Notes under the pieces: model-generated
The model's input: only the letters and a program-made list of their open reading frames with translations
What the model was told of the DNA's origin: nothing
Databases searched by the model: none
Source of the DNA: Octopus sinensis
Taxonomy: Eukaryota
Assembly (NCBI RefSeq): GCF_006345805.1
Contig: NC_043022.1
Location: 17,422,001 to 17,486,000 of the forward strand
Direction of reading: 5' to 3'
Length of the DNA stretch: 64,000 nucleotides
Made by a program: the position numbers and the translations under genes
Part shown: positions 2,873 to 62,315 of the stretch, piece by piece
Layout: each line of letters begins with the position of its first letter
Position numbering within the stretch: the first letter of the stretch is position 1

Positions 2873-3023
2873 CATATATATATATACATATTATATATAC
2901 ATATATATATATACATATATATCATATATATATACATATATATATATACATAATATATACATATATATATATATACATGATATTATACTATATATATAAT
3001 ACATATATATATACATATATATA

Positions 3024-3058
<35 letters not shown>

Positions 3059-3310
3059 CAGATATATATATATTATATATATATAACACAATATATACCT
3101 ATATATATATATACATACATATACTACGATATATATATAATACATACATATATATACATATATATATATATACATACCATATATTACATATATATATATA
3201 CATACATATATATACCTTATATATATACATAATATATATATATATATAACATATATATATCATATATACATACATATATACATATAAATATACATATTAT
3301 ATATATATAT
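1..3310. repeat. Compound (TA)n/(TACA)n microsatellite tract
   Basis: Directly visible, with small non-TA islands at about 1297-1327 and 2321-2560. Confidence 0.98.
2317..2478. repeat. Perfect inverted repeat, 78-bp arms with a 6-nt spacer
   Basis: 2317-2394 is the exact reverse complement of 2401-2478; the spacer is atattt. Confidence 0.95.
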
Positions 3311-4020: not shown

Positions 4021-4287
4021 TTTACCAGCGTCGCTTCACTGGCACGTGTAAAAAGATTCGACTGAGGTCATTGCCAGTACCGCCTGACTGGCCCCCATGC
4101 CGGTGGCACATAAAAAGCACTCACTACATTCTCGGAGTGGTTGGCATTAGGAAGGACATCCAGCTGTAGAAACTCTGCCAAATCAAGATTGGAGCCTGGT
4201 GCAGCCATCTGATTCGCCAGCCCTCAGTCAAAATCGTCCAACCCATGCTAGCATGGAAAGCGGACATCAAACAATGATGATGATGAT
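4021..4287 (+). mobile_element. RTE-LINE 3' tail / RTE-tail SINE ending in (GAT)n
   Basis: Contains ggttggcattaggaag...catccagctgtagaaac...catgctagcatggaaagcggac...gatgatgat, the same tail found on the RT-bearing RTE copies in this window. Confidence 0.85.
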
Positions 4288-10500: not shown

Positions 10501-13500
10501 AATAGTAATGCATGCATTTACATAAATAAGTGATGTAAATGGTTGAGTGTTGGGTTAAAAGGTATTATGTGAAAAATACCCCATGGTATCAGAAGAACAC
10601 AAAAGATATGGAAAGAAACAGGGAGTTAGAGCTTTAAGAGTGCTGGATTTGACATAAAGAATAACAAAGGATGAAATCAAAAGACAATATATGTGTATGT
10701 ATGCATGGGAATGTAAAGGTTCTGCAATAAATTGTATGCAGAACTTATGCCAGCAGGGAGAAATATCTAAGGAGGAGATGGTTATGATGATTTAGACTTT
10801 GAGGAAAATAATTTCTTAAAATGGGATTTGGTCAGAAATTTTGAAAGGTGCAACAGAGTGAAGCTGACCCAATATATTACTGGTATTGTTGATTTTAGAG
10901 GGGAAAAAAAAACAAAAGGATTTTTTAAAAAAATGTTTCTGGTTTCAATTAGGTAGAAAGAACTTTGCAGGTATCCAACCCCAGCTCAGATGTTGATGTA
11001 ATTCATGTTGAAGTTGAACAGTTGCAATTCAGTGTCTGTGAAATAGAAGTAACAGTAGGTTTGCATCCTTGAGAGAAAAAATTGGGAAACTGGTTAGTGG
11101 GGCCTGGAAGAAGAGACACAAAATGTGTTACAAGATGCGAGATAGATGTTGGGTGAACCTGGGTGAAAGCAGAGGCATAGCAAAACAAGAGATGCCAGGG
11201 GCCCTTGCTCCCAGATGCAGGTGTAAAGGGGGAACAAAATTTCTTCAGGCCTTCCATGCCTATTAAGGTGGAAGGTGGGGATCAAATGTGTCTATCCCTA
11301 GGGACAGAGCTGAGATCGATAGAAAAGGCAATGGAAACTGTATATTTTGGCTAAATACTAGAATGTGTTGCTAAGTTAGTGCTTGCCAATCACCTTCATA
11401 GCTTTAATTTGAGAATGTTTTCATATGTAGCAGCAACTTGTCCCTTATATGAGAGTAGTATTCAATTGTGGGTCTCTGTCAAAGCCTCGTAAAGTCAATA
11501 GCTGCACAGAGCTGAAATATTATCTGGCTATGAAGAAGAAGACTTTTCTGTAGGATGCAATTTTTGGTCCTCATTCACAGGACAAGAATCAGGTGTAACC
11601 CATAGAGTGGTCTAGCCACGAGATTTTTGTGCCAGACATAACCAAATGCCTTGCTGATGGCTAGCATAACAATGTTTTCAGTGATTTTCTCGAGATAGAA
11701 GGGCAATTCATATGTGAGATAAGAAAACAAGTGCCAAGTAGAACTGGCTCTACAGAAACCATGCTGGCAGTCATTTAGTAGGGAAAGAGATTCAAAGTGT
11801 TCCATCACTTTCGATATGTCAGAGTGAGAATGAAGAATTGAAACAAATATCACAGCTTCTCATCTTCCTCACCCATTTTTGTGCCTAGTTATATTATTAT
11901 GGTCCTGAAGGCATTAGCCATATAAATGACCATGGTGACTGGAATTGTCACTTGCCTCTTAATTTACAACAGAGTTCTCAAGAGTCTTGCTACCCAAAAT
12001 TTACTGTTCTAAGAACTTCAAACTAGAACAGAAAAAAAAAATAAATAAATACTCAGACACAGTTACTGTGAGATTAAGATACCTGTACTTATGGCCATAA
12101 AGCCATGAATTCAAATTTTACTATAACTACTGGCAATCCAGTATGTTAACGTCAACATGGCTGGAGTTCTTCAGGGCATATGTGGAAAGCATCTTTCTCT
12201 AGGAGTTGAAACCTGGATTGTGAAGAACAAACTTCAAGGATTCAGAACATTTCATATTGTGAAGAGCAAAGAGGAGATTTATGCACACATTCCAGCAATC
12301 TCTATTAGTGTTGCTCAAAGCAGAGCAGGCTTTGCAGGACAGTGCAATCAGGCTGAATAACAAGCCACATCATGTGTTGTATTTCGGAAATTTCAGTACT
12401 TTAATAAATGATTTAACTTTTCCACTACATTCATGCTATAGGTACGGATACACAACATGAGACCCTAAAAAAAGTTGATAGACAGAAAAACCATGTCACA
12501 AGAGGGTAAAATGCATCTCAGCTGCAGTCACTTCTGTACTATGCATCCCTTAGTGAATGTTCAAAACTTTTACTATTTGCCCCTGCCTTCTATATATATC
12601 AACTTTGATTGACCATAAACAATAAACTAAAATGAAAAAATAAAGAAACAATAATAAAAATAATCTTTAAATTCACTGTTCCTACCAAGAGGTTGGTAAT
12701 AATCATCACAGCTTCTTTTAACCATGAGTTTCATAGCAAAGTAACCAACTGAAAACCACTCTGACATCTCTTCTGTGGAAAATGGCCCTGAAGAAGGAAA
12801 TTTATAACTTAATACAGTCAATTTCAAAAGATAAGAAACAGGTATTTATATAAAATACTTTAAACATATCAAGAAATAAAAAAAAGTTTTAATAAATAAA
12901 CAAAAATTGTTGACAATTTTATCATTGGAGAAATGATCCAAAATCTGACAATTTGATTGTTCATTAAGCTACAAAACAATTAAAAGATTACAATTTTGAA
13001 TGCTCTTGTTTAGGCACAAATTCAAATTTATAGGGAAAAGAAATGAGATTTCATAACATCTATGCTTTTTCTGAAGGTCGTTAAGTCGATTGATTTCAAC
13101 TGACAAGTGATCCTTAGAAATTCTACCTTCACCCACAATATTCAAAACTGTATCAAATATACCAAAAATATCTAAAATCCAGTTGAAACAATGCTCATAA
13201 TAATGCAAATAGGGCTCTCATATAAGAACAACACCTGTATTCAAATTTCGCTGGTAACAAGGAAGCCAGCTTCTTCTTGTTGGACCTGCCAGAATAAGCA
13301 GACAAATCTCCTTCAAGCAAATCCTTACTATCTCAATAATTGGATAATGTTGTCCAAAGTATTCATAGCAAGACTGGAAGGTTATGGTTGGAATGTCTGA
13401 TTATATATAGTTTGCTTGATCAAGACTATTCTGGAGCTAAACAGCATTTTATACAGTATAGACAGGGGGTGGGGAGATACTAATTTTACAATCACTGGCC

Positions 13501-24080: not shown

Positions 24081-27000
24081 AACACATAAAGCCACTGTTT
24101 AAAGAAAATGAGTCACTGAGTGCTGATCTTGTGAGAAAAAGCAAAGGATATATGGCAATAAGCAAACTTGAGTTGTTCAACACCACAGATCCACACAAGA
24201 AAGAGGTAACCATTAATTACATCAAGATCAAGGAAAATGTAATATTGGCTACTGATGAGATGAATTTAGCAATAGCCACACATGGTCTTCCTGCTGTTCT
24301 TTTAAAGAGATGCCACAAAGCTCTCACAAAACCACTGCAGATATTGTTCAAGAATCTCCTTGCTTGTAAGCAAGCAACAAAAGGGAGTTGACTAATCACT
24401 CATAATTAGGTCAGCTTAACAAAACAAAGAAAATTAAATTAACAAAGACAATCTTCTGGAAAGGAAAACAAAACACAAACAATGAATAACAATATGTAGC
24501 AGACCCTATGGCAATTCAACAGGATAAATCAGCTTATTTGAATGTCTACTTTCCCATCTACCAATGCATGTTTGTCTGCTCTCATAGTACCAATAAGCAT
24601 TTAAACCTAATGAAAAAAAGCAGTGCTCCAGCATGGCCATAGCCTTTGGTCTGGAACATGTAAAAGAAGTATAATATCCACAGCTATTTCCTAACTAATG
24701 TTATGTCACTTTAATTTAACCACCTATCAATATATCTTTTGATGCATAAATTTATAGATCAGGACATTGTTTCATTATGTGAAATATTTCAACTGAACCA
24801 GCAATTTGAACTGCAAATGCAGAACAATAAAACCCCACCCACCCACTCTCTTTCTTGTTTTTTCCCACTATTTCCATTTCCTTCTTTGTCGCTTCTCCCT
24901 TTGTCTCTACATGTCTCCATTTGAGTTGGCTAACACACTGAGAAAACTAATAGACCACAGAAACAAGAATATTACAATAATTAAAAGCACAAACTCACTT
25001 TATTTGAAACAAAAATCCCATTTGAGTCAAATGTACCAGTTTCATTGTAATCTTCATCATTCGGAACACTCCACTCAGGCATATCTAAACAAGAAAATTA
25101 AATAAAGAGTTCCATACACATCTTTAAAAACTGTGAGCTGGTATCCATACACACACATTTTTTATTTGAATATAATTTTACTGAGAAGATAAACCTATTG
25201 TTTTTGGACCCAGGGGATCAAAGGTGCTCCAGCCATTGCCATCACTTTCTTTTTCTTTCCCCCTCATTTTCAAACAATGTACGGAGCCAAATTATCCAAT
25301 AAGTTTTCCTTTCTTAAGCTGTTAATGTAATACAAGAGATATTTTGTTATTTCTAGCAGGCTGAATGAGTGTCAAGACTTATTCAGATGGTACAGAGTTG
25401 GATTGAATTACATCACAATGTATGTTATTCTTCTGCTTTCAGAGCTCAAATGAGTCTGGGGTTACAGTTCTCATTCCTCATAACAAGGAAGATAAATGCC
25501 AATAAATATAGTCACTTCCATTGGAAATAATGGAAGTGTTCAAATTATAAATTTATTGGTTTACTTAACTAGGTACAAAAACCTTCTATTTTAGGAGAAA
25601 ACAGTACAAAACTTGGTGTCATTAATACTTTTGTAATTAGCATCAACAGCAGAAGTTGAATGAAAATCAGGATTGAAATCATGGCACAAGTTACAGTTGT
25701 AATGCAGCTTTATTTTAAGTAATTGTTATTTATAAGATATTAGGAAATGATTTATTTATATGTTATGCATGGAGTGAAATTAACTCTGCCATATTATGTT
25801 AAAAGTACAAGTGTCTGTGCAAATACAATAAATCAGTAGCTTTGTTGATTGTCAAAAGTGATATAAGGTCTATTATTCATTCATGCTTATTGAACTCACT
25901 TGTATATATATATATGTGTGCATATCCTGTATCACGATATTATGTATGGTGTAAGGCAGCAAGCTAGCAAAACCATTAGCACACTGGACAAAATGCTTAG
26001 CAGCAGTTCATCCATCTTTCAATTCTTAATTCAAATTCTGCCAAAGTCAACTTTGCCTTCCTTCTCTTTTGGGGTCAATAAAATACATACCAGTTACATA
26101 CTAGGGTCAATGTAATCAACTAGCCTCTTTCTCCAAAATTTCAGGCCTTGTGTAGAAAGGATATTAGATATGAGGGTCAAAAGTAGAACTTGAAAATTTT
26201 TCTCCACTTCTTAGTCTTGAGAATTTAGATGAAATATTTCAAAGCAAAAGATATCCATCTTAGTTGCTATGTTATGATTAAATTAAATTTGCAACTCTAT
26301 ACCAACTAGAGCAGGTTAGGTTACTTTGATTAAAATACTCCAGACTCACCAAAAGAACAACCATACTGTCTGCAATTAACTGCCATTCATTCTGTCAGTT
26401 TGTTTCCTTACCTCCATCATCCCACATCTCAGTGCTTCGGCTGCGCTGAAAGCTCCTTGGTCTGTCCCGGTCACGGTCAAATGTGTGTTGCCTGTCTTTG
26501 AAGAAACCTATACCAGTAGTGCTTTTAGTGCGTTCAGAATCCAAACCTCGCCATCTTTGAGAAGCTAAAGACAAGATAAAAGCAAAACATTTTATAGCAA
26601 ATAATATTGGAACAGAAGAATGCAGTTGATCTACCAAATTAAATTCTATTAAAAGCAAACTAATTATGGACAAGTATATGAAGAAGCCAATAAATATGCA
26701 AGCTGGAATACTAAAACTAATGAAAATTCATACGTTTGCCAACAAGATAACTGGCTACAAAATAAAGCAATGACTTAAACATTTAGCATTTAAACTGGCC
26801 AGATCAGGCCAAAATATTCTGTTTTATGTTCAAATCAGTCAGATCTGGCTTCTCACACCAACCCAACAATGTCATTCTAAAAATAATACAATCACCTCAT
26901 CGAAATTTCAGAGCTATGAGATGATACATGATTAATTCAAAACAATGAGAATAAATAAGACTACCCCCCATCCAAGTGGTTTTCTACGAGCCCCTAGATA

Positions 27001-30000: not shown

Positions 30001-33000
30001 AGAGGTCTCGTAGGTTGTGGGCTCATTTGAAGGAGGGGAGGGGTTGGTTAGGGAAGATGTGTGAAGTGGTCAGGTCGGACTGGAGATGCCGGAAAGGTCG
30101 GAGAACAGTGCGTTGAAGATGTAGGGTGGTGGGGTGGTAGGTGAGGGGAAAAGAGAGGCAGGAGATTGCAGGGCGGGTTCGGGGGAAGAGAGCAGATGCA
30201 CGGTCCACAGAACATGCTCTGGCAAGGGTGGTATCGATAGTGGTGAGGGGATATCCACGTAGGATGAAGTGGCGAGCTATGAGCTGAAACTGAGTCTCAA
30301 AGTCATGGTCGCCACTAGAGACTGCGTAGACGGAGGAATTGGGAATAGGGAATGGAAAGCTTGGTGTGTTTGGGGTGGGAGGAGGAGAAGTTTAGGTATG
30401 ACTGTGAGTCTGTGTTTGTAGTGGATGGAGGTGGTAAGAGTGGAGTGATGAATGCTGACCGAAATGTGAAGAAAGGAGACAGAGGTGTCAGAGATAGTGC
30501 AGGAGAAGTGGAGGGCAAGATGGAAAGATTTGATGAAAGAGAGGAAGGAGTCTAGATGTTCACGGGAGTGTGAGGTGGCACCAATACAGTCATCAATATA
30601 ATGGCCATATAGTTTGGGAGTGGGACCAGTGAAACTAGAGAATATTTGGGCCTCAACATAGCCAACGAACAGGTTCGCATAGTTGGGGCCCATTCTCGTT
30701 CCCATGGCCACTCCCAAGACCTGCTGGTAGAACTTGCCCGCGAATGAGAAGCGGTTGAGTGAGAGGACAAGTTCGGCCAGACGAACGAGTGTGGAGGTGT
30801 CAGGTTGGGGATTGGGTCGGAGGTCCAGGAAGTGTTTCAGTGCACACAGCCCCTCGTGGTGAGGGATCACAGTGTAGAGGCCCTGGATGTCCAGTGTAAA
30901 GAGAAGTTTGGAGGAGCCAGGAGGGAAGGAGAAAGAGTTGAATAGATGAAGAGCATGGTTGGTGTCATGGATGTGAGAAGGAAGAGAAGCCACAAGGGGG
31001 CAAGGACACGGTCGAAATATTTGGAGATAAGCTAGGTGGGGCAGTTACAGGTGGAGGCAATGGGGCGGCCCGGGTTGTTGGGTTTGTGGATTTTGGGGAG
31101 GAAGTAAATGGTGGGGATGCGGGGGGTTTGGACAATGAGGTTGGATGCAGTGTGGGGGAGACAGGAGGACGAGATGAGGTCATGGATGGTAGAGGAGACC
31201 GTCAGTTGGTAGCTGGGCGCGGGGTCAGAGGGCACAGGGCAGGAGAGGGAGGTGTCATGGAGTTGGCGAAGAGCTTCGGCCTTGTAGAGGTCCATGCACC
31301 ATACCACCACACCTCCACCCTTGTCGGCCAGTTTAATAATGATGTCAGTGCACCTCGCATTATTGAGGTGAGGGTAAAAATTTAGATTGCAATTTTTTTG
31401 TTGCTTATATTCCACCAATGGACAACGTGTGTGTTACATTGGTGTCATCATTCCATAAAATGTGTTTAATTAGAGAAAAATATTGAAAAAAACATCAATA
31501 CATGTGAGTGTTACAATATTGTTTTTTGCTGGGGGTTTTTTTTTACCAAAAAGGCTCCTCCAAAGTTTTTTAAAATGGCCAAAATCGATCCAAATATTAT
31601 TTGTAAGGCTTTAAGGCATTCCAAATAGCTATAAAAACAAAATCAGTTTTTGTTTTTACAAAAATAATACAAAGCACCATCCGAATATGGCCAATGTTAG
31701 CGCTGCTTTGACTGGCTCCCATGCCGGTGACATGTAAAAATACCATCCAAACACGGTCACTGCCAGCCCCTTCTAGCCCCTATGCTGGTGGCACGTAAAA
31801 AGCACCCACTACACTCTGAGTGGTTGGCATTAGGAAGGGCATCCAACTGTAGAAAACACTGCCAGGTCGGATTGGAGCCTGGTGTAGCCTCCTCACTTCC
31901 CAGATCCCTAGTCGAATCATCCAACCCATACCAGCATGGAAAATGGACATTAAATGATGATTAAAAAAAATTTTCATTCAATAAATAATGTCTTTATATT
32001 ACATATACAAAATAAACAATGGGTTTTCCAAATAGTGAATTAAAACTTGAAACGAAAACAGTGAAATAGAGAGTGAGGGGCTTTGCGGATGAAAACAGAA
32101 TACTCTGCAGTGAATGCATTGAATATTTAAATTTGTGTAAAATTGGAGTTCATAAACTCAACAAACATCAGAAATCGAAATTATAGGAAATTTCTTGGAA
32201 CATGAATTTATAAAAACATTTCCAGATGGTCAAACCTTTAATAATTGCTTCCTTTTAGTAACTGTTACATAACTAATTAACAAGCAGCTTTCTCCATTAT
32301 AATATAGAAAGAAAGATACTTATTGATAAGGACTAATCACTTTAATAACCAAGTTAATTGCCAACAAATGGATTACAATTATCTAATAACTCCAAGGACA
32401 GAACTTATTCCTTAGTTTTTTTGTCTACTTCTCCATGCTAGAAAAGAGAAAAACATGCAATACAAGAGCCTTCTGCACATCTCAAATTCCAATATACATG
32501 GTACCAGTGAGTTCTATGTTAACTTATAGCATGGTTTTACATTTTTATTTAGTTGGCCTGCTATTTCAGTTCAGGATTTTATGACTGAATGTTAATGTTG
32601 GTACCAGCCCTTCTTCTCCAATGATGTTAAATGTAACAGTTACACATGGAAAATTTGCTTCTTACTTCACATCATAAGTACACCAGGAGCAAAAAACATT
32701 CTACTTCAAAAATATTTTTAACATTTAAATAAAATAAGACATATCCAAAAATACATAACTATTTCACTGTGATCATCATCATCATCATCATTTAGCGTCC
32801 GTTTTCCATGCTAGCATGGGTTGGACGGTTCAACTGGGGTCTGTGAAGCCGGAAGGCCGCATCAGGCCCAGTCAGATCTGGCAGTGTTTCTACGGCTGGA
32901 TGCCCTTCCTAACGCCAACCACTCCGTGAGTGTAGTGGGTGCTTTTTACATGCCACCCGCACAGGTGCCAGACGGAGCTGGCAAACGGCCATGAACGGAT

Positions 33001-35553
33001 GGTGCTTTCACGTGCCACCGGCATGGGGGCCAGGCGAGGCTGGCAGCGGACACGACGATCGGATGGTTCGCTTAACCACAGCTGCAACTTCCACTGATGT
33101 TGATCGGCCTCAATTTTGGTTCTGCTTTCTGATATCTGATTTGATTTGGTTTGATTTTCATTTTGATTTTGATTCTGACTGTTCTCACTGGTCTTGATCG
33201 ACAAGACATAAAGAATTATAAAATTCAGAAAATTTTTTAAATATCAAAACCAAAATAACAAATTGAATTTTAAAATTATGTAGTTAGGTTTGATAAGATA
33301 AAAACACCAAAGTGAATAGTTTATGGTTTCTCAAAACTTCAAAAAATAGTAAACAAAGTGAGAAGTTGAAATGAAAATAATCTGTGTGAAATAAGAGAGA
33401 CTCTGGTTTTGTTTCTGGAATTTCTAAGCAGATACAGATCAGAAGAACAACATGAAATAACACAAATTTCACTTACCATGAAAACCATATCAGTGTTAAA
33501 TAAAACAAATAATATAAAAACAGTTGGGAAATACAGTTAAATAGTTAGTGGGACGGGAGTTGCTCAAACTGTGGTAACAAAGCCTAAAGATGCTTTATGA
33601 AGCTAGTTATCTCATGCCAACACACAAAAAGAATTAAATTACAATAGGAATTGTAAATTTTTTTAATGATTCAATAACAAAAATAATGTTGTCCAAAGTT
33701 AAATGTTTTGAAGGGTTTCAGTAAATTTTGTTCCCTAAATACTGAAAGGCACAGTTTGTTGAGTTTTTAGGCCCATTGCTAAATACACCAATGTTAAACA
33801 TCCCCTTAAAAACATAGCATTGCATCCCCAGCTAATGTAAATAGATACTTTATAGAGGTAGGGACTCTGTGGAGATAAGAAACAAAATTCTGGCTATAGA
33901 TATGTGGAGATAGAGCTTAAAGCAGTACACAGTGGGAACACTTTATAAATGCCGAGTGTTTTTTTGTTTGTTTGTATCGTGGAGCACAAATTTTATGAAA
34001 TAAAAAATAAAAGTTGAGAAAAACATTTAGAGCATTAATACGATCTACTACTAATATTTATTTCATAATAAATATACTTTAACCCTTTGCCTATAACTTA
34101 CCCCAACGTGGACCCATCTTCCTCCAATCTCCATCATCGTCTTCTTCAGTAACCAAAGGCATGACTGATTTTTCAAACAAGAAAGATAACATAGATTTAA
34201 ACATTCTAAGACATAGATGAACATGTGGCAGGAAAGGAGGATTGCAGAATGATGAAGAGTCAGAATAGCACAAAGAAAAAAGAGAGTCTGAGGGGCAAGA
34301 GAGAGAGGGAGGGGGAAATAAATCATTGCTATAATGTTAAACTGTTGTATATCCAGTTCTTTTGGTCAAACTCTCCTATCTCCAGCTGCTTCAGATGCCA
34401 AGATATCAAAAATTGTCAAAGTGGAGTACAACGGTTTTGCTATGGAATGGTATATTGATATAACTATTTTTTTGTTTTCTGAAAAAGCAACATTTTGGAA
34501 GTGTGACACTTCTGCATAACAGCAATGAAATGTAATAGAAATAGGATAGGAGTAGAAATGGTGAAAACTGAAGGATAAACAATGAATCGAAGTCATGGTC
34601 GATGCCAGTGCCATGTAAGAGGTACCCATAAATCAAAGTCATGGTCATTCGCTGCTGGTGTCATGTAAATGACACCCATACATCGTAGTTAGGGTTGTTG
34701 ATGGCGCCATGTAAATTGCACTTGTGAATCAAGATGGTTGCTGCTGGTGCCATGTAAGTGGTATCCATACATCATAGCCATGGTCATCAACAGTGCCATG
34801 TCAAATGATACCTGGGAATCGGGGTTGTTGATGGTGCAACATAAATGGCACTTGAGTCGTGGTCGTTGCCAGTGCCATGGAAATGGTACCCATGCATTGT
34901 AATCATTGCCACCACCTGTGAATCATAGTCATGGTTGTGTGCCAGTGTCATGTAAATGGGACCTGTACTGATGGCACATAAAAGTACTCATTACACTTCT
35001 GAAGTGGTTAGCATTAGAAAGAGCATCCAGCTGTAGAAACCATGCCATATCAGACTGGAAGCTGATGCAGCTCTCTGGCTCATCAGCTCCAGTCAAACCA
35101 ACTCACCCATGCCAGCGTGGAGAGCAGACTTCAAATGACGAGAAAATGTAAAAGACAAAAAGGAGAAAAATAAAGAGATAAGGAAGGAAGAATTGGATAT
35201 GAGGGAGGGGAGTAGAGCATGAGGAGAGAGGGGGAAAATTGAAAGAAAGGAACAGATGAAAGAGAGGAGGAGAGGAACGGAAAGAGAAAAAGGTGAAAAT
35301 GAGGTGAAGAGAAGGAGGAAAGACAAAAGATGTGAAAAAGTGTATTGGTTATAAATCAAAAGGGCACCTAGCAAGATTTGAACCCAATGTTGATGGAAGC
35401 ACAAGCATAGTTGTGTTATGAAGTTCACTTCCCAATAACATGGTTTCAAGTTCAGTTCCACTATGGAGAACCTTAGGAAAGTGGCAAGCATCTTTTACTA
35501 TAGTCCTGAGCTGACCAAAGCCTTGTAAGTGAATGAAAACCAAAAGAAGCTTG

Positions 35554-35589: not shown

Positions 35590-38500
35590 ATGTACACAAA
35601 AGCTACTTGCTGCAAGCTGTGTTATCTCTTCTATCAACAACATACATGCTTGTTCCACACTTCAAGGAGCTTGTGGAATAAGGGATCCCTTATTTTAAGA
35701 ACAAGTAAGGGTTAATGACAGAAAGTGCACTGGCAGTAAAACACTGTCCCAATAACATATTCATCTAACCTATGCTAGCATGGAAAAAATGTAAGTAAAA
35801 TGAATGGGTGATAGCCAAGTACACTTAATATTTCATGTAAATGGCTGAGCTTGCAAAAAAAAGGGCAAAATAAAGAGAAAAATGGCATGCTAATGTTGAC
35901 TCTTCTGGATCTTATACTGAATCAACAAAGTTTATGTATAGTGACTTCAAGGATGAGAATTTCAAGTGCATAAGAAGCTTTCTCTTAATGCTTTTAGAAC
36001 AGGAATTGGAGGCAGAGTTTTGCATTAAGATATAAAACAAACTTTGGAATGTAAACTAATCAACATGTAACTTTAAAGAAAAAAGGCAGAATTAGAAAAA
36101 AAAAGTACTTAATTTCTAGCTCTATTTAATCTAATTAAGGAGATAACTCACACAAGCACAGGAATAGATTAATGTAACCAATTCACCATGTTAAAAATTA
36201 AAAAGAAAGCAAAGATTGTCAAAGCATGAACAGAACACCATCAAAGCGTCTATCAAGGGTTAAATTTAGATTAATGCAATACAAGCTTTTATCTGAAATT
36301 AGTTTAACCCTTTAGCATTTAAGTTGACCATATCCAGCCAAAATATTTTACATGGTTTCATGTTCAAACTGGCCGGATTTGGTCTCTCATGCACACCCTA
36401 CAATGTCATTCTGAAAATAAACAATCACATCATTGAAATCTCAAGGTTACAAGATGATGTGCTATCATTTTCAAACAATATGCATCATATTTGACAGGAA
36501 ATTCTGAATGCTAAACGGTTAATAGTTAAACGAAAAATTAATCCTAATCAATGCAAAATAAAAGCATTTCAATTAATGAAAACTTACACGAATATCAATC
36601 TGAAGAACAGTGTCAAACGAAATCTATATCTTTATAAATATAAATATTGGTTTCAGATTTTGGCACAAGGCCAACAGTTTCAGAGGAGGAGGAGGTAAGT
36701 CTACAGCATCAACCCCAATGCTCAACTGCTACTTATTTTATCGACACTGAAAGGATGAGAAGCAAAGTCTAACTTGCCGGAATTTGAACTCAGAACATAA
36801 AGAGAGATGAATTGCTGCTGAGCATTTTGCCTAGTGTGCCAATGATTCTGCCAGCTCAATGCCTGATAATAATAAATTACATTTGCTGAACACATGCTGG
36901 CATAGAAAAAGGGATATAAAACAAAGGAATATATGCATCATCATCGTCAATGTTTTAACTTCCACTTTTCCATGCATGCAAGGATCGGATACAATTTCTG
37001 TGGCTGGGTACCCTTTCTGTTGACACAAAATCATCTGTTTCCAAGCAAGGTAATATTTCCCTGCAGTTTGACAAGTTGTTGCAGAAAATTAGAAATGACC
37101 AACACCATTTGTATGACAGTGACACATGGAATCAAGACACACACACAATGGCTTCTTTTAACTTCATCAAACAACTCCACTCACAAGCTTTTGGCTGCCC
37201 TGTGGCTATTGTACAAGACACTTGATGTGCCATACAGTGCAAATGAACCAAAAAACCATGTAACTTCTTACCACATAGCCACACTGTGTGAAGATATTAT
37301 AATTAAATATTTTCACAATATATTTTATACTTCTGCCTTTTACATTGTTACAATGACATGGAAGTGGTTTTTATTTTTGGGGGGTTTTTTAAGACATATC
37401 TTATAAAAGATATCTGTGCAGAAGGACAAAGGTTTAGGTCTTTGGTCTTCCCTGTCCTGCTCTATAGTTGTGAAACTTGAACACTGTCTGAGAACCTCAA
37501 GAACTGCCTGAACTCCTTTGGTATCAGAACGCTTCACAGGATTATGGCTTTACCACTGGTCAAATTTCGTATCCAACCAACAACTCAGAAACTGGGATGC
37601 ATTCTGTTACTTGTATAATTTGGTGGCCCCAGTTCAGACTGTTTGGCCAGGTTATTCAATTTTCCAACCCGCTTACTATGTTCTTTTCATTGGGGATCTG
37701 GCTGGGTTGACAACTTGAGTTGGTTGACCACATTCCACATGGTCATGACAGATGAATTATTTCGGAGATGGAATCTGACTGAGACTCTGCCCAACAGGTT
37801 GCCAAGGAGGACCAAGGAGTATACTGACAAATGGTCAATACAGCAATGTGCTGCTGCAACAACATATAGCTCCATATCTGATCTGACTTCAGAAGACAAA
37901 GAGCAGCGGTCACAGCTTGAGGCCAATGGAAAGAGAAGAAACTATCTTCACACTTTATGACCTGGCTCAAATGCCTGAAACAAAGTATTCACTGCTAATA
38001 GTATCCAAGAAACAGTGCAGTTGAATCAAGTGACTGATGAAGCCTACCACCCAAGGACAAGAACTGAACTTCTAACAGTATTTCACATAGCTTTCAGACA
38101 CAAGGCTATGCTTGATCCTAGGCTATGGGTGAGGAAACTTCCTCATGATACTGTGTTGTAGATCAAAACCCAAAGCAACTTCCTTAACCATACAGCCATG
38201 CCTAACCCTATTAAGTTGGAAGACTGTATACTCTAATACATGTCAATTTATGAGAGGTAAGCAGGAATTACATAACCCAAAACATGATGAAAGAAAACTA
38301 GCAGTTATGATTAATATTTTTCAGCACTGAATATTTAGTAATTAATATTAGCTTCACTACTTGAATACACACACACACATATATATATATCCATCCACAA
38401 TCTTCATAACAACACTTACCCCATCGTTCTCGAGAGCAAGCTTTCCTCCAATCACCTTCATCATCATCTAGTGATTTTTTATCACGCCAATTCTCATTGC

Positions 38501-41500
38501 TGAATGATCTGGAATATTCTTTAGCTGGATGGGCAGAGTCCTCAAAGCTTCTAGCTGAATAACTACGTTCATACCGTCTGTGAGAAAAAAAAGGGAAACT
38601 ACATTTTCTATAGATTATTTATCTATTACTGATCATTAAAGATGGTAAGAAATGAGATGACAATTTGTTCTATATAGATTTATTTATGAAAAAAATTATT
38701 TTACTGAATAGTTTATAGACACACGAGTTATATGAGAGCTTTAATCATTACTTCAGGATACAAGTTATGACAATTCTCTCTTTTCCAAGTCAAAATTCAA
38801 TTTTTTTTAATTAGAAATTTTGGTGCGGTGAAATATCACATCAAGTCTTCAGTTGAAAATAAAAGCACACATGCACACAAACATTAAAGAAGTTATTCCA
38901 TTTCAATGAACAATATGATGGTTTGCTAACTGAAAAGCAGTGACTTGTGGTTTACAGTTTTGGACGAGACCACATTTGCACCAAATTCACCTGAGACAGA
39001 GAACATAAGAGCATGCATAAAAATAAAATAAATCCTTTCAGTGAGATTGAATAACAGTTTTTACAAGAAACATAATCAGTTGACTCTCTTCATTATTTAC
39101 TGAATGATGACTTAATATCAGACAGAACTGAAGGATGTAATAAAGCAGTCAGTATTCTGGATATAGACCCAGAATACAAGTTATGTGCTAACTCATTGCT
39201 TATTTCAGTGGTTTTCAACCAGGGTCTATATGGCCCTTAGGGATCCATATAAGATTAGATTTTGTTGATGTTAGGAAGGGCATCCACCCAAAGAAACCAT
39301 GACAAACAAGACTGGAACTTGGTGCAGCTCTCTAGCTTACCAGTTCCAGTCAAACCATGTAACCCGTGCTAGCATGGAAAGCAGATGCTAAACGATGATG
39401 ATGAAGAGTTTATCTCCAATAAATTGGTTATACTTCCACAAAACACAAAGTATTTTTAATAATTATTTTTATACAATTCCGAATTAATATTTAATTTTAA
39501 AAATATAATAGGCTAGGAAAGTTCACCCAAGTAAAATAAGAATCAAAGGGGGTCCAAAGGTAAAACAAAATGGTTGAGAAACACTATCATTTGTTAGAGT
39601 TGATGGTTTATATGAACACAAATATATTGCCAAGTGGGCAAAATTAAATACTGTACAGTACTTACAGAGTAACAGTTCTTCCAAAAGATACAAAAACCAA
39701 AATAAAGCCAAATTCAACAAAATATGGGAAGAAACATTTTGATCATATGACAGCAAGCACGAAACATTAATACATATATTGGTGCAAATATATAGGAAAC
39801 AATGTTGGATTCAATATGCAAGGTGTGTCATAAGATTTGTTTGAGGCCACCTCTTTCAAGAGCTCTAACTTTCTTCCAACTTTGTTTTTCTTTAGCTTAC
39901 TTTTCAGATAATGTCAGGCATCAGGTTGACTCAGCATTGTCTTAAAAAGTGTAGCATAGAGATAGAGAGATAGCTCACTTCCTGAAAGTTGCATGATCCT
40001 TCATTGTCAAAGTTCGAAAGGAGCTGGAAGCTGCTGACAGGGATCCAACATTAGCAGCTAAATGCAAAATGCATGCAAAGGGTACTAATTCCTTCAGAAC
40101 ACATAACTTTGTACAAAATGCTCAAGAAATAATCAATAAAAACTCCATAAAGTTAATTCGACCCATTGCAAAGGACCTGAAAATTTCAGAAGTGTTGTGC
40201 ATGACGACATCTGGTATAAGTTCTATGTGATGCAAAGGTCAGTTTATGTCGGATGTGACAAGAGAGAATTGTTCAATCTGAGCAGAGTGCTTTCCAAACA
40301 AGTTAGAACACCAAGAGGTTGGAATTCTTTGGTTTTCCTTTGATGAGAAGAACTCATCAAAGGCAAACCAAATGGATGACAGATGGTTATGCTGAGACCT
40401 GAATGAGGTTCCAGATGGTTCTGAGAGTCCTCAGCAACATGGGAAATGTCATGCCTCCTCGCTTTGTGTTCACTGGGCTTAAGAGTCAATACCATCATCT
40501 ACACAGAGGTATTGGAACAAGTTGTGAGGCCCTGAATAGACAGAGTGTGCAAGAGAAGACTACATTTTCCAAGAAGATTCTGTACAGTCTCATAAAGCTA
40601 CAACCCAAGCATGAATGCATGCCAATCTCTATGATCAAATTCTCCCAGACACAACCTTTTAGCTCACCAGATGGGACATGGTCAACAAAGAGGTTTATCA
40701 ACACCCCCATAACACCAGACAATGTCTGAAGTCTACCATAACCAGCACTATATCCAAAATTGATAAAGATCATCTGATTCAGGTATATCAATGCTTTTGA
40801 CTCCATATTGAAGTAGCCATTGATGCTAACTGTGGATTCATTGAATAAGTGTGATAAAAGAATTCCCAAGAATATTTGTGCCAATTTGTTTTTAAATACA
40901 ACTTTTCTTTGATGAGCTATGCACCTTTTTCTAAATTCATACAAATGACTTAAAAAAAACTGATGCATTTTGTATTATTTGAATTACAAACCTGTAAGTG
41001 TAATAAATATAGGAGGACATAAACAACTGTAGTCTAATATTCCACAAAATATTTTCATTAATTGAGATGTATTGCTGGACCAACTGATTTAACTTAAATT
41101 TGTTTCAATTTTTGAATGACATTATATTTTGATATCAAGTGAGAGAATAGAAAGTGAACCACTCCAGATACAAAACTTTTCCATTCTCTAAATCATCATC
41201 ACAACCATTTAACGTCCATTTTCAATGCCAGTATGAATTGCAGTTTGACAGGAGCTGGCAAGCCAGAGAGCTGAATAAAAGCATCAAATGTCTGTTTTGT
41301 CAAGGTTTCTACAGCTGGATGCCCTTCCTAATGCCAGCCACTTTACAGAGTGGACTGGAAGTAAATGTATATTTTTTAAAAACATTCTTATGCCTCCCAT
41401 GCTTTGTTTAACAAGAGAAATAGAAAGACTAAGATGAAGTAGATCAAACCTTACCTATCATCCCAGTTTTCTCGACTTCTATTCCGGGTAAAACTACTTG

Positions 41501-43934: not shown

Positions 43935-46900
43935 TTGTGTGTCTGTGTTTGTCCCCCTAGCATTGCTTGACAACCGATGCTGGTGTGTTTATGTCCCCAT
44001 CACTTAGCGGTTCGGCAAAAAGAGACCGATAGAATAAGTACTGGGCTTACAAAGAATAAGTCACGGGGTCGAGTTGCTCGACTAAAGGCGGTGCTCCAGC
44101 ATGGCCACAGTCAAATGACTGAAACAAGTAAAAGAGTAAAAAGAGTATATATATATATATACATATATATATATACAAATCAAAAATCAAAATCAATTCA
44201 ATGACTGGCGTCCATGCTAGCGGGGTACAAAGAGCACCATACGAGTGTGATTATTGACAGAGGGGCTAACTGGCTTCTGTGCCAGTGGCACTTAAAAGGC
44301 ACCATTCGAGTGTGACTGTTACCAGCGTCGCACTACTGGCACTTGAGGAGCCCCATGCTAGTAAGGTATTAAGAGCACCATCCGAGCATGATTGTTGCCA
44401 GAGCGGCTATCTGGCCTCCGTGCCAGTGGTACGTAAAAAACACCATTCGAGCGGGATCATTACCAACATCGCCTTACTGGCACCTGTGCTGGTGGCATGT
44501 GTAAAAAGGATTCGAGCGAGGTTGTTGCCAGTGCTGCCCAACTGGCCCTGTGCCGGTGGAACGTAAAAGCACCCACTATACTCTCAGAGTGGTTGGCGTT
44601 AGGAAGGGCATCCAGCTGTAGAAACTCTGCCAGATCAAGATTGAAGCCTGGTGCAGCCATCTGGTTCGCCAGCCCTCAGTCATACGTCCAACCCATGCTA
44701 GCATGGAAAACGGACGTTAAACAATGATGATACACATATATATACACACACGTATATATACATATACATATATATACGCATATATATATATTTGGGGGCC
44801 TGTTGCATCATAATAAAAGCAAAATTTCTTTCCTGAGAGATCTTACTGCATGCAATCTAGCCCTATGAAGAGCACTCGTAGAAACTCACCTCAACCCTGA
44901 TATAGAGGATGCAGAAATACATGTACCAAACTATGCCATACTGCAAACAGACAGAAGGGAAAGGAGCCATGGTGGAGTTGCTGTATACATCCGTGACAAC
45001 CTCACACACTCTAATTGTATACATTAATTGTATATGTAAGACAACATAATATAGTCATATGCAATAGATATTGCCCACCAGATGCTCCAAACCACATAGG
45101 CAAGTTTAAAGATTGCCTCACAAGAATTCAAGTAATCCTCATGAAACTGGAACACCACATGACCATATTTCTTATGGGTGATTTCAACTTCCCCAACGTC
45201 AAATGGCCCGAAGGTCTCATACTCTCAGGAATGACTAATTCAGGTAGAGTCCCAGCTCAACCTCACCAATGCCCTATTCATGGAGCAAGCTGTACTCAGA
45301 CCAACTAGGACGAATAACATTCTGGATCTCTGCTTCACAAACAATATGCACATCGTTCATGATGTGAAAGTGCCGCTGACATTAGTCTCGGATCACAACA
45401 TAATAGAGCTGTCTATGTTTGGACCGAAAGTAACCAGAGACATACAACCTAAAGGAAGCACCCGAAATCTCTCCAATCTGAACTTCCACAAAGCAGACTG
45501 GAAATCGATCCAAAAAGAGATCCTCAGAGAGTACTGGCCAAAATGTCTCTCCACACCAGACATTGAAATGAAACTAGAATTTTTCATGTCTGTTGTGCAA
45601 GCCATATGCCAGAAATTTGTCTCAGAGCACAAGGCCAAAACAAACAGGAACAAGATTCCAAGGGAGAGGAAGATCCTCATGAGACGATGGACGAAGGTTG
45701 CAAATCGCCTCAACCAACATCCCCAAAATAGCAAAAGGTCCCTCCCAGAAACAACACTGATGGAGATTGAAAAAAAGCCTGCAAAAATCATATGTGGGGA
45801 GAGAGCAAAGAAGCATGGGTTATAAAAAAACATTAAGTCAAACCCAAAGGCTTTTCATTACACGAAAGAAACAGCCTCAGTACACTGCAAGATAGGACCC
45901 CTCTTCCAAAAGGATGGCACCCTCACATAGAGTCCAACCAGGATCAGTGAGGTACTGAATGACCAATCCAAAAGCCTCTTTACCACTCCGTTGGAACAGA
46001 CAAGTGAACAAACCAGTGGATTTCTTTGCCGCCTCGCCTATAACCAGCGATGCAGTTACAATGGAATACATCAACATTAGCAAAGATATACTACTAGCCA
46101 TCGATGAGATGGACACTAACTCAACTGCTGATCTTGATGGTTTCCCAGCAATGCTCCTCAAATCGTGCACGCGTGCCCTGGCAAAACCCCTCCAGATTCT
46201 CTTCTAGAACTTTCTTGCAAATGACAGGCAAGCAAGCAAGCTGAAGGAGAGAATAATATGCCCAATCCATAAAGGAGGAAGCAGAGCAGATGCCAAAAGC
46301 TACAGGCCTATCTCTCTTGATTTCACACATCAGCAAAGTCATAAACCAGATAGTCACAGGGAAACTAATCGCATTCCTAGAAGAAAATGACTTGCTGAGT
46401 GATACCCAGCATGGCTTTCGACCACGTAAAAACTGCCTGACCCAGCTCTTACAACACTATAACTGGGTGTTGAGGCAGTTACTCAACAACTCAAGGTTAT
46501 AGCCCAACTAATTAGGGAGAGAGTTAGTTTAGACAAGATTCAATTTGGTTTTGTACCAGGAAGAAGCACCACTAATGCTGTATTTCTGGTAAGACAGCTG
46601 CAGGAGAAATACATAGCCAAAGATAAACCACTGTACTTGGCTGACGTTGATATGGAGAAAGCCTTTGACAGGGTCCCCCAATCCCTTCTCTGGTGGTTAA
46701 TTTGGAAACTAGGGACAGATGAGTGGTTAGTGAAAGCTGTACAAGCCATGTACAGGGATGCTGTCAGTAAGGTGAGAGTGGGCAACGAGTATAATGAAGA
46801 ATTCTGGGTAGAAGTAGAGGTTCACCAAAGATAATTCCTCAGCCCCTCTTATTCATTATAGTCCTCCAGGTAATAACAGACGAATTTAAGACAGGATGCC

Positions 46901-60600: not shown

Positions 60601-62315
60601 GAGTGGCACTTCTTCACACATATCTCCTCGTCCATCTGTAGTACATGACCATACCAGCACAAATGTCTCTCTTGCACACCACATCCGATGCTCCTTATGT
60701 CCAACTTTTCTCTCAGAGCGCTTACACTCTGTCGTGTGTGCACACTGACATTACATCATGCTAGCTTCATTTCTTTCCAGTCTACACAAATCCTCAGCAG
60801 TTACAGACCATGTTTAACTGCTGTGAATCATGGCAGTTCACACACATACATCGTACAATCTACCTTTCAATCTGAGTGAGAGGCCCTCTGTCACCAGTAG
60901 GGTAACTTTGCCCAGGCTATTCTTATTCTAGTGATAACACTCTCTGAGCATCCACTCCCATTACAGACTTGATCACATAGGTAGCGGAAGCTATCAACTA
61001 CTTCTAGTTTCTTCCCCTGGTATGTGATGGAATCTGTTTTCTGAGCATCTGTGGTGCTTATTTCCCCTGTGCATCTCCACACACAAAAGCTATCTTCCCA
61101 GTTAATCTTCCTTTGATGTTGCTGCACCTCTTGTGTCCATCTTATGGAGTTTCTAACTGCACCTTTTCTACAGATTGAGCAGGGCCATCTACCTGAAGGG
61201 GTGTGTGATATGTTCGCCTTCCTACTTACTAGAACTTTGGTCTTTGCAACACTGACTCTAAGGCCCTTCGATTCTAAACCTGGTTTCAACATCTGAAATT
61301 TATTCTCTAGTCTGGTAGTGATTCTGTGCTATGAGGGCCAGGTCATCAGCATAGAAGAGCTCCCAGGGGCAACCTGTCTTGAATTTCTCTGTTATTGCCT
61401 GGAGGACTATGATGAATAAAAGGGGACTGAGGGCTGATCCTTGGTGGACCCCTACTTCTACCTGAAATTCTTCACTATACTCATTGCCAACTCTAACCTT
61501 ACTAACGGCTTCTCTGTATAGGGCCTGTACAGCCCTTATTAACCATTCGTCAATCCCCAGTTTCTGCATCACCCACCAGATAAGGGATCAGGACCCCGTC
61601 AAAGACTTTCTCCAAGTCCACAAAAGCCAAGTATAAGGGTTTATCTTTGGTTAGGTATTTCTCCTGCAGTTGCCACACCAGGAATATAGCATCAGTGGTG
61701 CTACTACCTATCACAAAACTGAACTGCATCTCATTTAAGCAGACTCTCTAAATTAGTTGGGCTATGACCCTCTCCTTGACTTTCATCACCTGATCCAGCA
61801 GTTTGATACCCCTGTAGTTATTTCTATCTAAAGCACCACCATTACCCTTGTAGCAGTTGACTATGGTGCTGCTATGCCAGTCATTGGGTATGACTCCATC
61901 ATGAACTTCCTGGTTTAATATGCAGGTGACTAGGCCATAGCCCACACCACCAGATGTTTTAAGCATCTCAGCAGTGATCCCTGATGGGCTGGGGACTTTT
62001 CCTGGTTTCATACCCTTAATTGCTTTATCTACCAGGTAGCTGTCTATTCAGATAGTACTTGTTGAAATCAAATTAAACAAATTGGAGGAAACTAAAAAAA
62101 AAATTTTTTTTTCCATTTTTTTGTGCATTTTTCAGTAGAACAGATTTTGAATTTAACATTAGTTACATTGGAAACCTTACTTTATGTTCACTACAGCCAT
62201 GTTACATATATCACATGACAGGAAATGCATCAAGTTCCTGATAAACATGAAATTTTCTATATTTCAATCAAAATAACAGTATGAACAAACCCTTCTCGTT
62301 CTTTCTCTCACTATA

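What the first reader, a model, noticed from the sequence alone, without database searches (positions are those of the whole stretch)
34102..34287. Probable duplicated GIGYF exon: a second acidic-GDWRK...RW motif, either cassette or mutually exclusive with exon 5
Seen: exon 5 ends DDDEGDWRKACSRERW-G|gtaagt, and 4.3 kb downstream an intronic stretch ends EDDDGDWRKMGPRW-G|gtaagt with the same donor and phase. Among the aligned identical residues, four differ only at synonymous third positions (GAT/GAC, GGT/GGA, AAA/AAG, CGA/CGT), which suggests both copies are under protein-level selection. Three in-frame acceptors exist. 34164 (63 nt) and 34287 (186 nt) are phase 1 and would add the exon after exon 5. 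34205 (104 nt) is phase 2, matches exon 5's phases, and would replace it. Established: vertebrate GIGYF1/2 carry one acidic-GxWR...RW motif between the 4EHP- and DDX6-binding motifs. Inference: a cephalopod isoform switch that doubles or swaps a short W-containing interaction motif in a translational repressor.
Basis: partly seen in the sequence, partly recalled or inferred. Interest (0 to 1): 0.75.

Follow-up and report, generated by a model that had tools for sequence, protein, structure and literature searches.

The report
Duplicated mini-exon in octopus GIGYF
A 63-base coding exon in an octopus translational-repressor gene (GIGYF) is an old, cephalopod-specific copy of the end of the exon before it and adds a second tryptophan-containing motif to the protein; the exon is real, but whether it is switched on and off by splicing is still unknown.

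Summary
On the minus strand, exon 5 of a GIGYF gene (38577-38420) ends DDDEGDWRKACSRERW-G|gtaagt. A 63-nt stretch 4.3 kb downstream (34164-34102) reads (V)MPLVTEEDDDGDWRKMGPRW-G|gtaagt in the same phase.

The motif occurs exactly twice in the six-frame translation and never in 200 randomised windows.

It is a real exon, not intron:
- The 63 nt, its tcag acceptor and its gtaagt donor are conserved without indels in Octopus bimaculoides, Argonauta hians and a more distant unidentified cephalopod. The surrounding intron does not align.
- The Argonauta gene model splices exon 5 to this exon to exon 6. An O. bimaculoides RefSeq model splices it to exons 6 and 7.

Scallop, limpet and another lophotrochozoan have no second copy at the same place. 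Of 197 retrieved GIGYF sequences, only the cephalopod one carries two motifs.

Only the 34164 acceptor is conserved. The 34205 and 34287 acceptors, and the idea of mutual exclusion with exon 5, are rejected.

Regulated skipping is plausible but unproven. The acceptor is weak, the exon is phase-symmetric, synonymous change is low and the upstream intron flank is conserved. No transcript data were within reach.

The motif's partner is unknown. This is an ordinary kind of event (tandem exon duplication) in an interesting place.

The parts
34102..34164 (-). The 63-nt duplicated exon. It is phase 1 to 1 and encodes (V)MPLVTEEDDDGDWRKMGPRW(A/G), the second acidic-GDWRK...RW motif.
   Evidence: Sequence and translation. 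Conserved at 63 nt with no indel in O. bimaculoides (L002 9999-10061), Argonauta (L001 24883-24945) and L003 (8253-8315). Present in protein models P0001, P0060 and P0079.
34165..34192 (-). Conserved upstream intron flank with the acceptor: ..tgttatctttcttgtttgaaaaatcag|. A pyrimidine tract is set back behind a purine-rich spacer, which makes a weak 3' splice site.
   Evidence: The four-species alignment is conserved to about -27. The BLASTN block between window and L003 extends 28 nt upstream of the exon, against 2-6 nt for exons 5 and 6. Pyrimidine fraction at -13..-4 is 0.40, against 0.8-1.0 for the neighbouring exons.
34095..34101 (-). Donor gtaagtt. It is identical to the exon 5 donor and is part of the duplicated unit.
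38420..38577 (-). Exon 5, the parent copy. Its last 49 nt or so (38420-38468) encode DDDEGDWRKACSRERW and end at the ancient phase-1 boundary RW-G|gtaagt.
   Evidence: The same ...RWG|gt boundary appears in many invertebrate genomic ORF hits (P0066, P0071, P0073, P0075) and in Pecten.
26412..26564 (-). The next exon, (A)SQRWRGLDSERTKS...EMWDDG, to which the 34102 donor is joined in the gene models.
   Evidence: The junction ...GPRW-A-SQRWRG is in P0060 and P0079.
24999..25084 (-). Exon encoding the DDX6/Me31B-binding motif (PEW ... FDx4F): DMPEWSVPNDEDYNETGTFDSNGIFVSNK.
   Evidence: Motif definition from PMC12249416.
58296..58506 (-). Exon 2, holding the 4EHP-binding region (KLADYRYGREEMLALF..., PLAY).
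   Evidence: Motif definition from PMC12249416.
41455..41554 (-). Exon 4 (GRGRAEGFGQRLSYDDGETSSFTRNRSRENWDDR), phase 0 to 2.
12684..12788 (-). GYF-domain exon (GPFSTEEMSEWFSVGYFAMKLMVKRSCDDYYQPLG). It identifies the gene as a GIGYF.

Best explanation
Window 34164-34102 (minus strand) is a genuine 63-nt coding exon of a cephalopod GIGYF gene, the scaffold of the 4EHP-GIGYF translational repressor.

**Origin (inferred from homology).**
- A tandem duplication copied the last 45-50 nt of exon 5 together with its phase-1 donor (acidic run-G-D-W-R-K-x3-5-R-W-G|gtaagt).
- This happened in the cephalopod lineage after it separated from bivalves and gastropods.
- A new acceptor and about seven new codons (MPLVTEE) were recruited upstream.

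**Splicing (shown at gene-model level).**
- The exon is spliced between exon 5 and the old next exon.
- It inserts 21 residues and so puts a second copy of a conserved tryptophan-containing short linear motif into the disordered N-terminal effector region.
- The insertion lies about 50 residues upstream of the DDX6-binding PEW/FDx4F motif.

**Inferred, not shown.**
- Inclusion is probably regulated rather than constitutive. Skipping keeps the reading frame.
- Functionally, the exon raises the number of W-motifs from two to four in that short stretch. This would increase the avidity for whatever partner reads the ancestral motif. CCR4-NOT W-pockets and RNA are candidates only.
For: **Not chance; paralogous with exon 5**
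- The motif occurs twice in the window and 0 times in 200 randomisations.
- The alignment of the two copies includes the donor.

**Purifying selection as an exon**
- The 63 nt are 97%, 92% and 90% identical to O. bimaculoides, Argonauta and L003, with no indels.
- Acceptor and donor are intact in all four, and the flanking intron is unalignable.
- Against L003 the exon is the best conserved N-terminal block: 87%, against 77-84% for exons 2-6.
- Of 13 substitutions, 8 fall at third, 4 at first and 1 at second codon positions, my count from the four exon sequences. Four of the replacements are D/E swaps within the acidic run.
- Both differences from O. bimaculoides are synonymous.

**Use in gene models**
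- Argonauta protein P0001 reads ...GDWRKACSQRWGSVMPLLSEEDDEGDWRKMSPRWGQASQRWRG....
- O. bimaculoides XP_014785473.1 and .2 read MPLVTEEDDDGDWRKMGPRW-A-SQRWRG... and continue into the PEW exon.

**Lineage-specific**
- No second copy lies in the homologous introns of Pecten (434 nt), Patella (587 nt) or L009.
- Only the Argonauta protein among 197 retrieved GIGYF sequences has two motifs.
- Orthologous copies resemble each other more than the paralogous copies do, so the duplication predates these lineages.

**Hints of regulated inclusion**
- The length is 63 = 3 x 21 nt, with phase 1 at both ends.
- The acceptor is weak and its weakness is conserved.
- Synonymous divergence is 0.10 and 0.18, against 0.46 and 0.62 in exons 2-7 (Fisher p = 0.044 and 0.008).
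- The conserved intron flank upstream is longer than at neighbouring exons.
Against: - No transcript reads or isoform sets could be reached. Neither inclusion in the window's own species nor any skipping has been observed directly.
- The two gene models may not be independent. The Argonauta annotation could have used O. bimaculoides proteins as hints.
- The O. bimaculoides model is a fragment that starts at the exon's own ATG and runs into intron 7.
- The dN/dS values rest on 20 codons and reach 0.83 against Argonauta.
- Within Octopus the exon shows two synonymous changes, more than the 0.04 per site of neighbouring exons would predict.
- Low synonymous change and a weak acceptor also fit a constitutive exon that depends on exonic enhancers.
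- No function is known for the ancestral motif. It has no Pfam family and no solved structure, and it is not assigned in the GIGYF papers read.
Confidence: 0.8

Rival explanations
1. The exon is constitutive. It is simply exon 6 of every cephalopod GIGYF transcript, so there is no isoform switch and the protein always carries two motifs.
For: - Both available gene models include it and none omits it.
- Its donor is perfect, GGG|gtaagt.
- Its purine-rich interior (GAAGAAGA, GGAGGAAGA) could act as a constitutive enhancer that compensates for the weak acceptor.
- Its conservation equals or exceeds that of neighbouring exons.
Against: - The acceptor is weak and that weakness is conserved.
- Synonymous divergence is reduced about three- to five-fold.
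- 28 nt of upstream intron are conserved.
- The exon is phase-symmetric.

These are the usual marks of conserved cassette exons (established knowledge), but none is proof.
Confidence: 0.4
2. The exon is mutually exclusive with exon 5. A 104-nt version starting at 34205 (phase 2 to 1) replaces exon 5.
For: In this window only, the AG at 34207-34206 gives an open 104-nt stretch with the same phases as exon 5.
Against: - The 34205 acceptor and the 41 extra nucleotides are not conserved.
  - O. bimaculoides has an 86-nt insertion plus an in-frame stop there.
  - L003 has a stop two codons upstream of the 34164-type acceptor.
  - Argonauta shares no sequence there.
- The Argonauta model contains both exons.
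- Replacement would delete RYERSYSARSFED...SFSNENWRD, which is conserved across molluscs.
Confidence: 0.02
3. It is a conserved non-coding intronic element, or a decoy or pseudo-exon that is not translated, and the gene models are wrong.
For: - Synonymous sites are unusually conserved, which points to constraint at the nucleotide level.
- The O. bimaculoides model is an odd fragment.
Against: - The reading frame is open and exactly 63 nt in four lineages.
- Changes concentrate at third codon positions and in D/E swaps.
- Both splice sites are kept.
- The motif it encodes is the protein's own conserved motif.
- No stable or covarying RNA structure was found. The single-sequence z-score is +1.9, and there are 0 compensatory pairs.
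Confidence: 0.05
4. The resemblance arose by chance, or a GIGYF-like motif evolved convergently inside an intron.
For: None beyond the short length of the match.
Against: - 0 occurrences in 200 randomised windows.
- Same strand, same gene, same phase and the same donor heptamer.
- Conserved in other cephalopods.
Confidence: 0.01

Closest known systems
The single acidic-GxWR...RW motif of GIGYF1/2 in vertebrates and other invertebrates, for example ..EDDEGSWRVAGSRRENERW.. in a vertebrate fragment and ..EEGDGDWRKAGSSKW-G|.. in Pecten
   Same: - Same position, between the 4EHP-binding region and the PEW/FDx4F DDX6-binding motif.
- Same core: acidic run, G-x-W-R/K, then R/K-W.
- In invertebrates the same phase-1 intron follows directly after the second W.
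   Different: All 129 non-cephalopod sequences with the region have one copy. The cephalopod gene has two, and the second sits on its own 63-nt exon.
Alternative or additional exons born by tandem exon duplication (general phenomenon; my own knowledge, not tested here)
   Same: - An adjacent paralogous exon in the same phase with the same donor.
- Old and conserved.
- Phase-symmetric.
   Different: - Only the 3' third of the parent exon was copied.
- The two exons are used together rather than as alternatives, in the one full model available.
- Lengths differ (158 against 63 nt), so this is not the classic mutually exclusive pair.
Tryptophan (W/GW) motifs of GW182/TNRC6 that insert into pockets of CNOT9 and NOT1 (Chen et al. 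2014 and Mathys et al. 2014, as cited in PMC6009589)
   Same: - Trp flanked by G, D or S in a disordered, multivalent repressor scaffold.
- GIGYF binds CCR4-NOT through several weak, unmapped elements in its N-terminal region.
   Different: - No binding data exist for this motif.
- The CNOT9 site mapped in human GIGYF2 lies in the C-terminal half, residues 667-712.
- This comparison is an analogy only.
The 82-nt tandem array at the same exon end in the zebra mussel Dreissena polymorpha GIGYF gene
   Same: The 3' end of the homologous exon and its donor region have been tandemly amplified, 4.6 copies at 90% identity.
   Different: - It is recent.
- The unit is not a multiple of 3, so the copies shift frame.
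- One model reads through the copies (P0088) and another skips them (P0090).
- There is no sign that the copies form a conserved exon.

Membership tests
GIGYF (GRB10-interacting GYF) proteins: identity of the host gene | Canonical 4EHP-binding motif YXYX4L-Phi near the N-terminus | tested here: met
   Exon 2 encodes KLADYRYGREEMLALF, identical in the motif to the vertebrate hits. Definition from PMC12249416.
GIGYF (GRB10-interacting GYF) proteins: identity of the host gene | DDX6/Me31B-binding motif: PEW followed by a split FDx4F | tested here: met
   DMPEWSVPNDEDYNETGTFDSNGIF contains PEW and F-D-SNGI-F.
GIGYF (GRB10-interacting GYF) proteins: identity of the host gene | GYF domain signature GPF-x4-[MVI]-x2-W-x3-GYF | tested here: met
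   GPFSTEEMSEWFSVGYF at window 12684-12788. Signature from PMC12249416. Full-length mollusc homologues carry PF02213.
Exon born by tandem exon duplication | Significant sequence similarity to a neighbouring exon of the same gene, on the same strand | tested here: met
Exon born by tandem exon duplication | Functional splice sites and an open frame, conserved in other species | tested here: met
   tcag| and |gtaagt plus 63 open nt in four cephalopod lineages.
Exon born by tandem exon duplication | Absent from outgroups, so it is a derived duplication | tested here: met
   Pecten, Patella and L009 genomic loci. Of the 197 proteins scanned, 129 carry one motif, 66 (mostly fragments) none, and only the cephalopod protein P0001 two. 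Nautilus and named decapodiforms could not be examined.
Alternatively spliced cassette exon | Transcripts both with and without the exon | not testable with these tools
   Only inclusion-type models were found. No cephalopod transcripts or isoform sets turned up in the protein collections.
Alternatively spliced cassette exon | Frame-preserving length, suboptimal splice site, conserved flanking intron, depressed synonymous rate | tested here: met
   63 nt, phase 1 at both ends. Pyrimidine fraction 0.40 against 0.8-1.0. 28-nt conserved flank. pS 0.10 and 0.18 against 0.46 and 0.62. These features are supportive, not defining.
Mutually exclusive exon pair (with exon 5) | Same phases and interchangeable length, with never both in one transcript | tested here: not met
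   The conserved form is 63 nt, phase 1 to 1, against 158 nt, phase 2 to 1. The phase-matching 34205 acceptor is not conserved. Argonauta model P0001 contains both exons.
GW182-type W-motif ligand of CCR4-NOT | Direct binding of the Trp to CNOT9 or NOT1 pockets | not testable with these tools
   This is a resemblance only: GDW and RW in an acidic, disordered context. No structure or family covers the segment.

The most novel reading that the evidence does not exclude
Cephalopods use regulated, possibly tissue-specific, inclusion of this 21-residue exon to change the number of W-motifs in the effector region of GIGYF, and so tune how strongly the 4EHP-GIGYF repressor recruits a decay or repression partner. 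That would also mark the so far unassigned, pan-metazoan acidic-GxWR...RW motif as a real interaction module, with a natural one-copy and two-copy comparison available to test it.
Probability: 0.25. Interest if true: 0.55.

Novelty: new member of a known kind. Interest (0 to 1): 0.35.

Why it matters
GIGYF proteins are central scaffolds of 4EHP-mediated translational repression, ribosome-collision surveillance and miRNA or TTP silencing.

The stretch between the 4EHP-binding and DDX6-binding motifs contains a motif conserved from cnidarians to humans. None of the GIGYF papers read here assigns it a partner.

A lineage that duplicated exactly this motif, gave it its own exon and kept it for a very long time is independent evidence that the motif does something dosage- or valency-sensitive. 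It also offers a natural contrast for binding studies.

For genome annotation, the practical point is that this 63-nt exon is real. It should appear in cephalopod GIGYF models, which are fragmented in O. bimaculoides and split in Argonauta.

Beyond that, the event is a routine example of exon duplication in a disordered region.

Tried and rejected
**Searches for transcript or isoform evidence**
- Two protein searches used octopus N-terminal queries. The only cephalopod model they returned was Argonauta P0001, plus one genomic ORF (P0059).
- The exhaustive representative search added the O. bimaculoides fragment P0060.
- A 1271-aa query was built from octopus exons joined to a Pecten C-terminus, because the word-index search appeared to return only proteins of about the query's length. 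It brought hundreds of full-length GIGYFs but none from a cephalopod.
- Skipping therefore could not be tested.
- One search did not return P0060 or P0079, although they match 100 residues of that query.

**More cephalopod loci**
- Logan contigs L004 and L011 belong to relatives of L003. They stop 1.3-1.4 kb upstream of the next exon and do not reach the cassette position.
- A DNA pattern scan of JGI metagenomes found nothing.
- The species of L003 could not be identified. A literature search on its accession numbers gave nothing. Its source looks like a host-plus-symbiont metagenome assembly, possibly of a decapodiform, but that is a guess.

**RNA structure as the reason for low synonymous change**
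- The single-sequence fold is less stable than shuffled sequences (z = +1.9).
- The alignment fold pairs the pyrimidine tract with GGAGGAAGAUG inside the exon, but without any compensatory change.
- This explanation is not supported.

**Family and structure searches on the motif region**
- No Pfam family matched.
- No meaningful PDB match was found.

**Rejected readings**
- The longer exon versions (34205, 34287) and mutual exclusion with exon 5 are rejected on comparative grounds.

**Flank identity**
- Short global alignments of the flanks were too noisy in pyrimidine tracts to use. The extents of the BLASTN blocks and the four-way alignment were used instead.
Full report
**What is in the window**

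The minus strand carries the 5' two-thirds of a GIGYF gene. I mapped its coding exons by translation and by tblastn with a cephalopod homologue:

| Exon | Window coordinates | Content |
|---|---|---|
| 1 | about 62620-62588 | MAETMKLGPEW |
| 2 | 58506-58296 | 4EHP-binding YRYGREEMLAL |
| 3 | 48395-48287 | |
| 4 | 41554-41455 | |
| 5 | 38577-38420 | parent copy of the motif |
| candidate | 34164-34102 | second copy of the motif |
| next | 26564-26412 | (A)SQRWRG... |
| PEW/FDx4F | 25084-24999 | DDX6-binding motif |
| further exons | down to 12788-12684 | GYF-domain exon |

The three hallmark motifs of GIGYF proteins, as defined in PMC12249416, are all present.

**Checking the observation**

Exon 5 ends ...DDDEGDWRKACSRERW-G|gtaagt. 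4256 nt further on, tcag|TCATGCC...CGTTGGG|gtaagt encodes (V)MPLVTEEDDDGDWRKMGPRW-G|gtaagt.
- Both end in phase 1.
- The motif, written as GDWRK, [DE]3G[DE]WR or G.WR.{3,9}RWG, occurs exactly twice in all six frames of the 64 kb. It never occurs in 200 Markov randomisations.

**Is it an exon?**

Three independent cephalopod loci could be fetched:
- Argonauta hians (L001);
- Octopus bimaculoides (L002);
- an unidentified cephalopod contig from an ENA assembly (L003). It is equally distant from Octopus and Argonauta, so it lies outside that pair.

The window is about 92-94% identical to O. bimaculoides in the introns that align. It has extra intronic insertions, so it comes from another Octopus-like species.

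In all four sequences the stretch is exactly 63 nt and open in the same frame. It is preceded by tcag and followed by gtaagt. Identity to the window is 97%, 92% and 90%. The intron beyond about 27 nt upstream and about 20 nt downstream cannot be aligned between genera. Against L003 it is the best conserved of the N-terminal exon blocks, at 87% against 77-84%.

The substitutions look like those of a coding sequence (with the positional counts being my own tally from its four sequences):
- 8 of 13 are at third codon positions and 1 is at a second position;
- four of the replacements are D/E swaps in the acidic run;
- both differences between the two Octopus species are synonymous.

Two public gene models use the exon.
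- The Argonauta protein (P0001) reads ...GDWRKACSQRWGSVMPLLSEEDDEGDWRKMSPRWGQASQRWRG..., that is exon 5, this exon, then the next exon.
- RefSeq XP_014785473.1 and .2 of O. bimaculoides (P0060, P0079) begin at the exon's ATG and continue across two removed introns into the next exon and the PEW exon.

The second model is a fragment. Exons 4 and 5 contain no Met, so a 5'-truncated model would start exactly there. That explanation is my inference.

**Which acceptor?**

Only the AG directly before TCATGCC (window 34166-34165) is shared by all four species.
- O. bimaculoides has an 86-nt insertion (a repeat fragment plus (GAT)n) 28 nt upstream of the acceptor, with an in-frame stop;
- L003 has a stop two codons upstream;
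- Argonauta shares nothing there.

Hence the 104-nt form, and with it the mutually exclusive reading, and the 186-nt form are rejected. Argonauta has a second AG 6 nt upstream, which its model uses. That adds two residues.

**Origin and age**

The similarity to exon 5 covers the acidic run, GDWRK, the RW and the donor heptamer. It does not cover the sequence before or after. So the unit copied was the 3' 45-50 nt of exon 5 plus the start of its intron.

The phase-1 boundary right after RW is ancient. Many invertebrate genomic ORFs end ...RWG(K), and Pecten has ...SSKW-G|gt.

Outgroups have only one copy:
- the homologous introns of Pecten maximus (434 nt), Patella vulgata (587 nt) and an unidentified lophotrochozoan (L009) contain no second motif;
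- among 197 retrieved GIGYF sequences, from cnidarians to mammals, 129 have one motif and only the Argonauta protein has two.

Orthologous copies are more alike than paralogous ones. The duplication therefore predates the split of Octopus, Argonauta and the L003 lineage, and there has been no later homogenisation.

**Constitutive or regulated?**

No transcripts could be reached, so this stays open. Four indirect features point to regulation.
- *Frame.* The exon is phase-symmetric, so skipping keeps the frame.
- *Weak acceptor.* The pyrimidine tract is set back behind a purine-rich spacer. The pyrimidine fraction at -13..-4 is 0.40, against 0.8-1.0 for the six neighbouring exons, and this layout is conserved in all four species.
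- *Conserved flank.* The conserved upstream intron flank is 28 nt, against 2-6 nt at exons 5 and 6.
- *Low synonymous change.* Synonymous divergence is 0.10 (Argonauta) and 0.18 (L003), against 0.46 and 0.62 for exons 2-7 pooled. Non-synonymous divergence is similar or higher (Fisher p = 0.044 and 0.008).

These are the usual marks of conserved cassette exons (my knowledge). They are also compatible with a constitutive exon that leans on exonic enhancers. An RNA-structure explanation found no support. I put regulated inclusion at about one half.

**What it does**

The exon adds 21 residues about 50 residues upstream of the DDX6-binding motif, inside the disordered N-terminal effector region.

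The papers read map 4EHP, DDX6/Me31B and, through the GYF domain, HPat, TTP, TNRC6 and ZNF598. They report only weak, multi-site contacts of the N-terminal region with NOT1 and CCR4-NOT. None assigns a partner to the acidic-GxWR...RW motif, and no Pfam family or solved structure covers it.

The best-supported statement is that cephalopods doubled a conserved Trp motif. That it works by raising valency for a W-pocket partner such as CCR4-NOT is analogy, not evidence.

**Verdict**

- The alternative acceptors and mutual exclusion are wrong.
- The isoform switch is untested.
- The exon already sits, unremarked, in two public gene models.
- It is a new example of a well-known kind of event, in a functionally interesting but uncharacterised motif.

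Noticed in passing
L010:13587-13967 (Dreissena polymorpha CM035919.1): The 3' end of the homologous GIGYF exon and its donor region are tandemly amplified: an 82-nt unit, 4.6 copies, 90% identity. One model (P0088, 1394 aa) reads through the copies in shifted frames and gains an 87-residue insert. Another (P0090, 1283 aa) skips them. This is an independent duplication at the same exon end in a bivalve.
   Followed up: partly
L002:~9884-9969 (O. bimaculoides), equivalent to window ~34193: An 86-nt insertion (a repeat fragment ending in (GAT)n) lies 28 nt upstream of the cassette acceptor in O. bimaculoides but not in the window. It stops just outside the conserved flank.
   Followed up: yes
L001:24875-24884 (Argonauta): There are two acceptor AGs 6 nt apart (cgaag|gctcag|TCATG). 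The Argonauta gene model uses the upstream one, which adds Gly-Ser. The other three species have only the downstream AG.
   Followed up: partly
window 34085-34195 (-) and orthologues: The conserved pyrimidine tract UAUCUUUCUU upstream of the acceptor is complementary to GGAGGAAGAUG inside the exon (10 pairs in the alignment fold). There are no compensatory changes, and the single-sequence fold is not unusually stable.
   Followed up: yes
window 33310-26702 (-): The intron between the cassette and the next exon is 7.5 kb here but 1.3 kb in O. bimaculoides. The extra 6.6 kb or so has no counterpart at the orthologous position in O. bimaculoides and contains repeat and reverse-transcriptase-like ORFs, for example 30277-30993.
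   Followed up: no
window 4071-4287, 5253-5544, 16916-17188, 18079-18365, 32772-33019, 44476-44724, 51692-51945, 60050-60300: These are many copies of one short interspersed repeat, about 200-300 nt and 75-90% alike. The same repeat is present several times in the O. bimaculoides locus.
   Followed up: no
window 6400-6729 (-), 61300-61572 (-), 45015-45825 (+), 46963-47424 (+): These ORFs show reverse-transcriptase (YADDLALIA) and endonuclease-like sequence. They are fragments of retrotransposons in the GIGYF introns.
   Followed up: no
window 124-3175: About 3 kb of TA/CA-rich simple repeat, which gives long YIYIYI-type ORFs on both strands.
   Followed up: no
L003:4774-4779: In the unidentified cephalopod, exon 4 appears to use a GC donor (gcaagt) where the other species have gtaagg or gtaggc.
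   Followed up: no
window 26412-26416 (-) vs L002:11555-11557: The last full codon of the exon after the cassette is GGA (Gly) in the window and Argonauta but Val in O. bimaculoides (MWDDG against MWDDV).
   Followed up: partly
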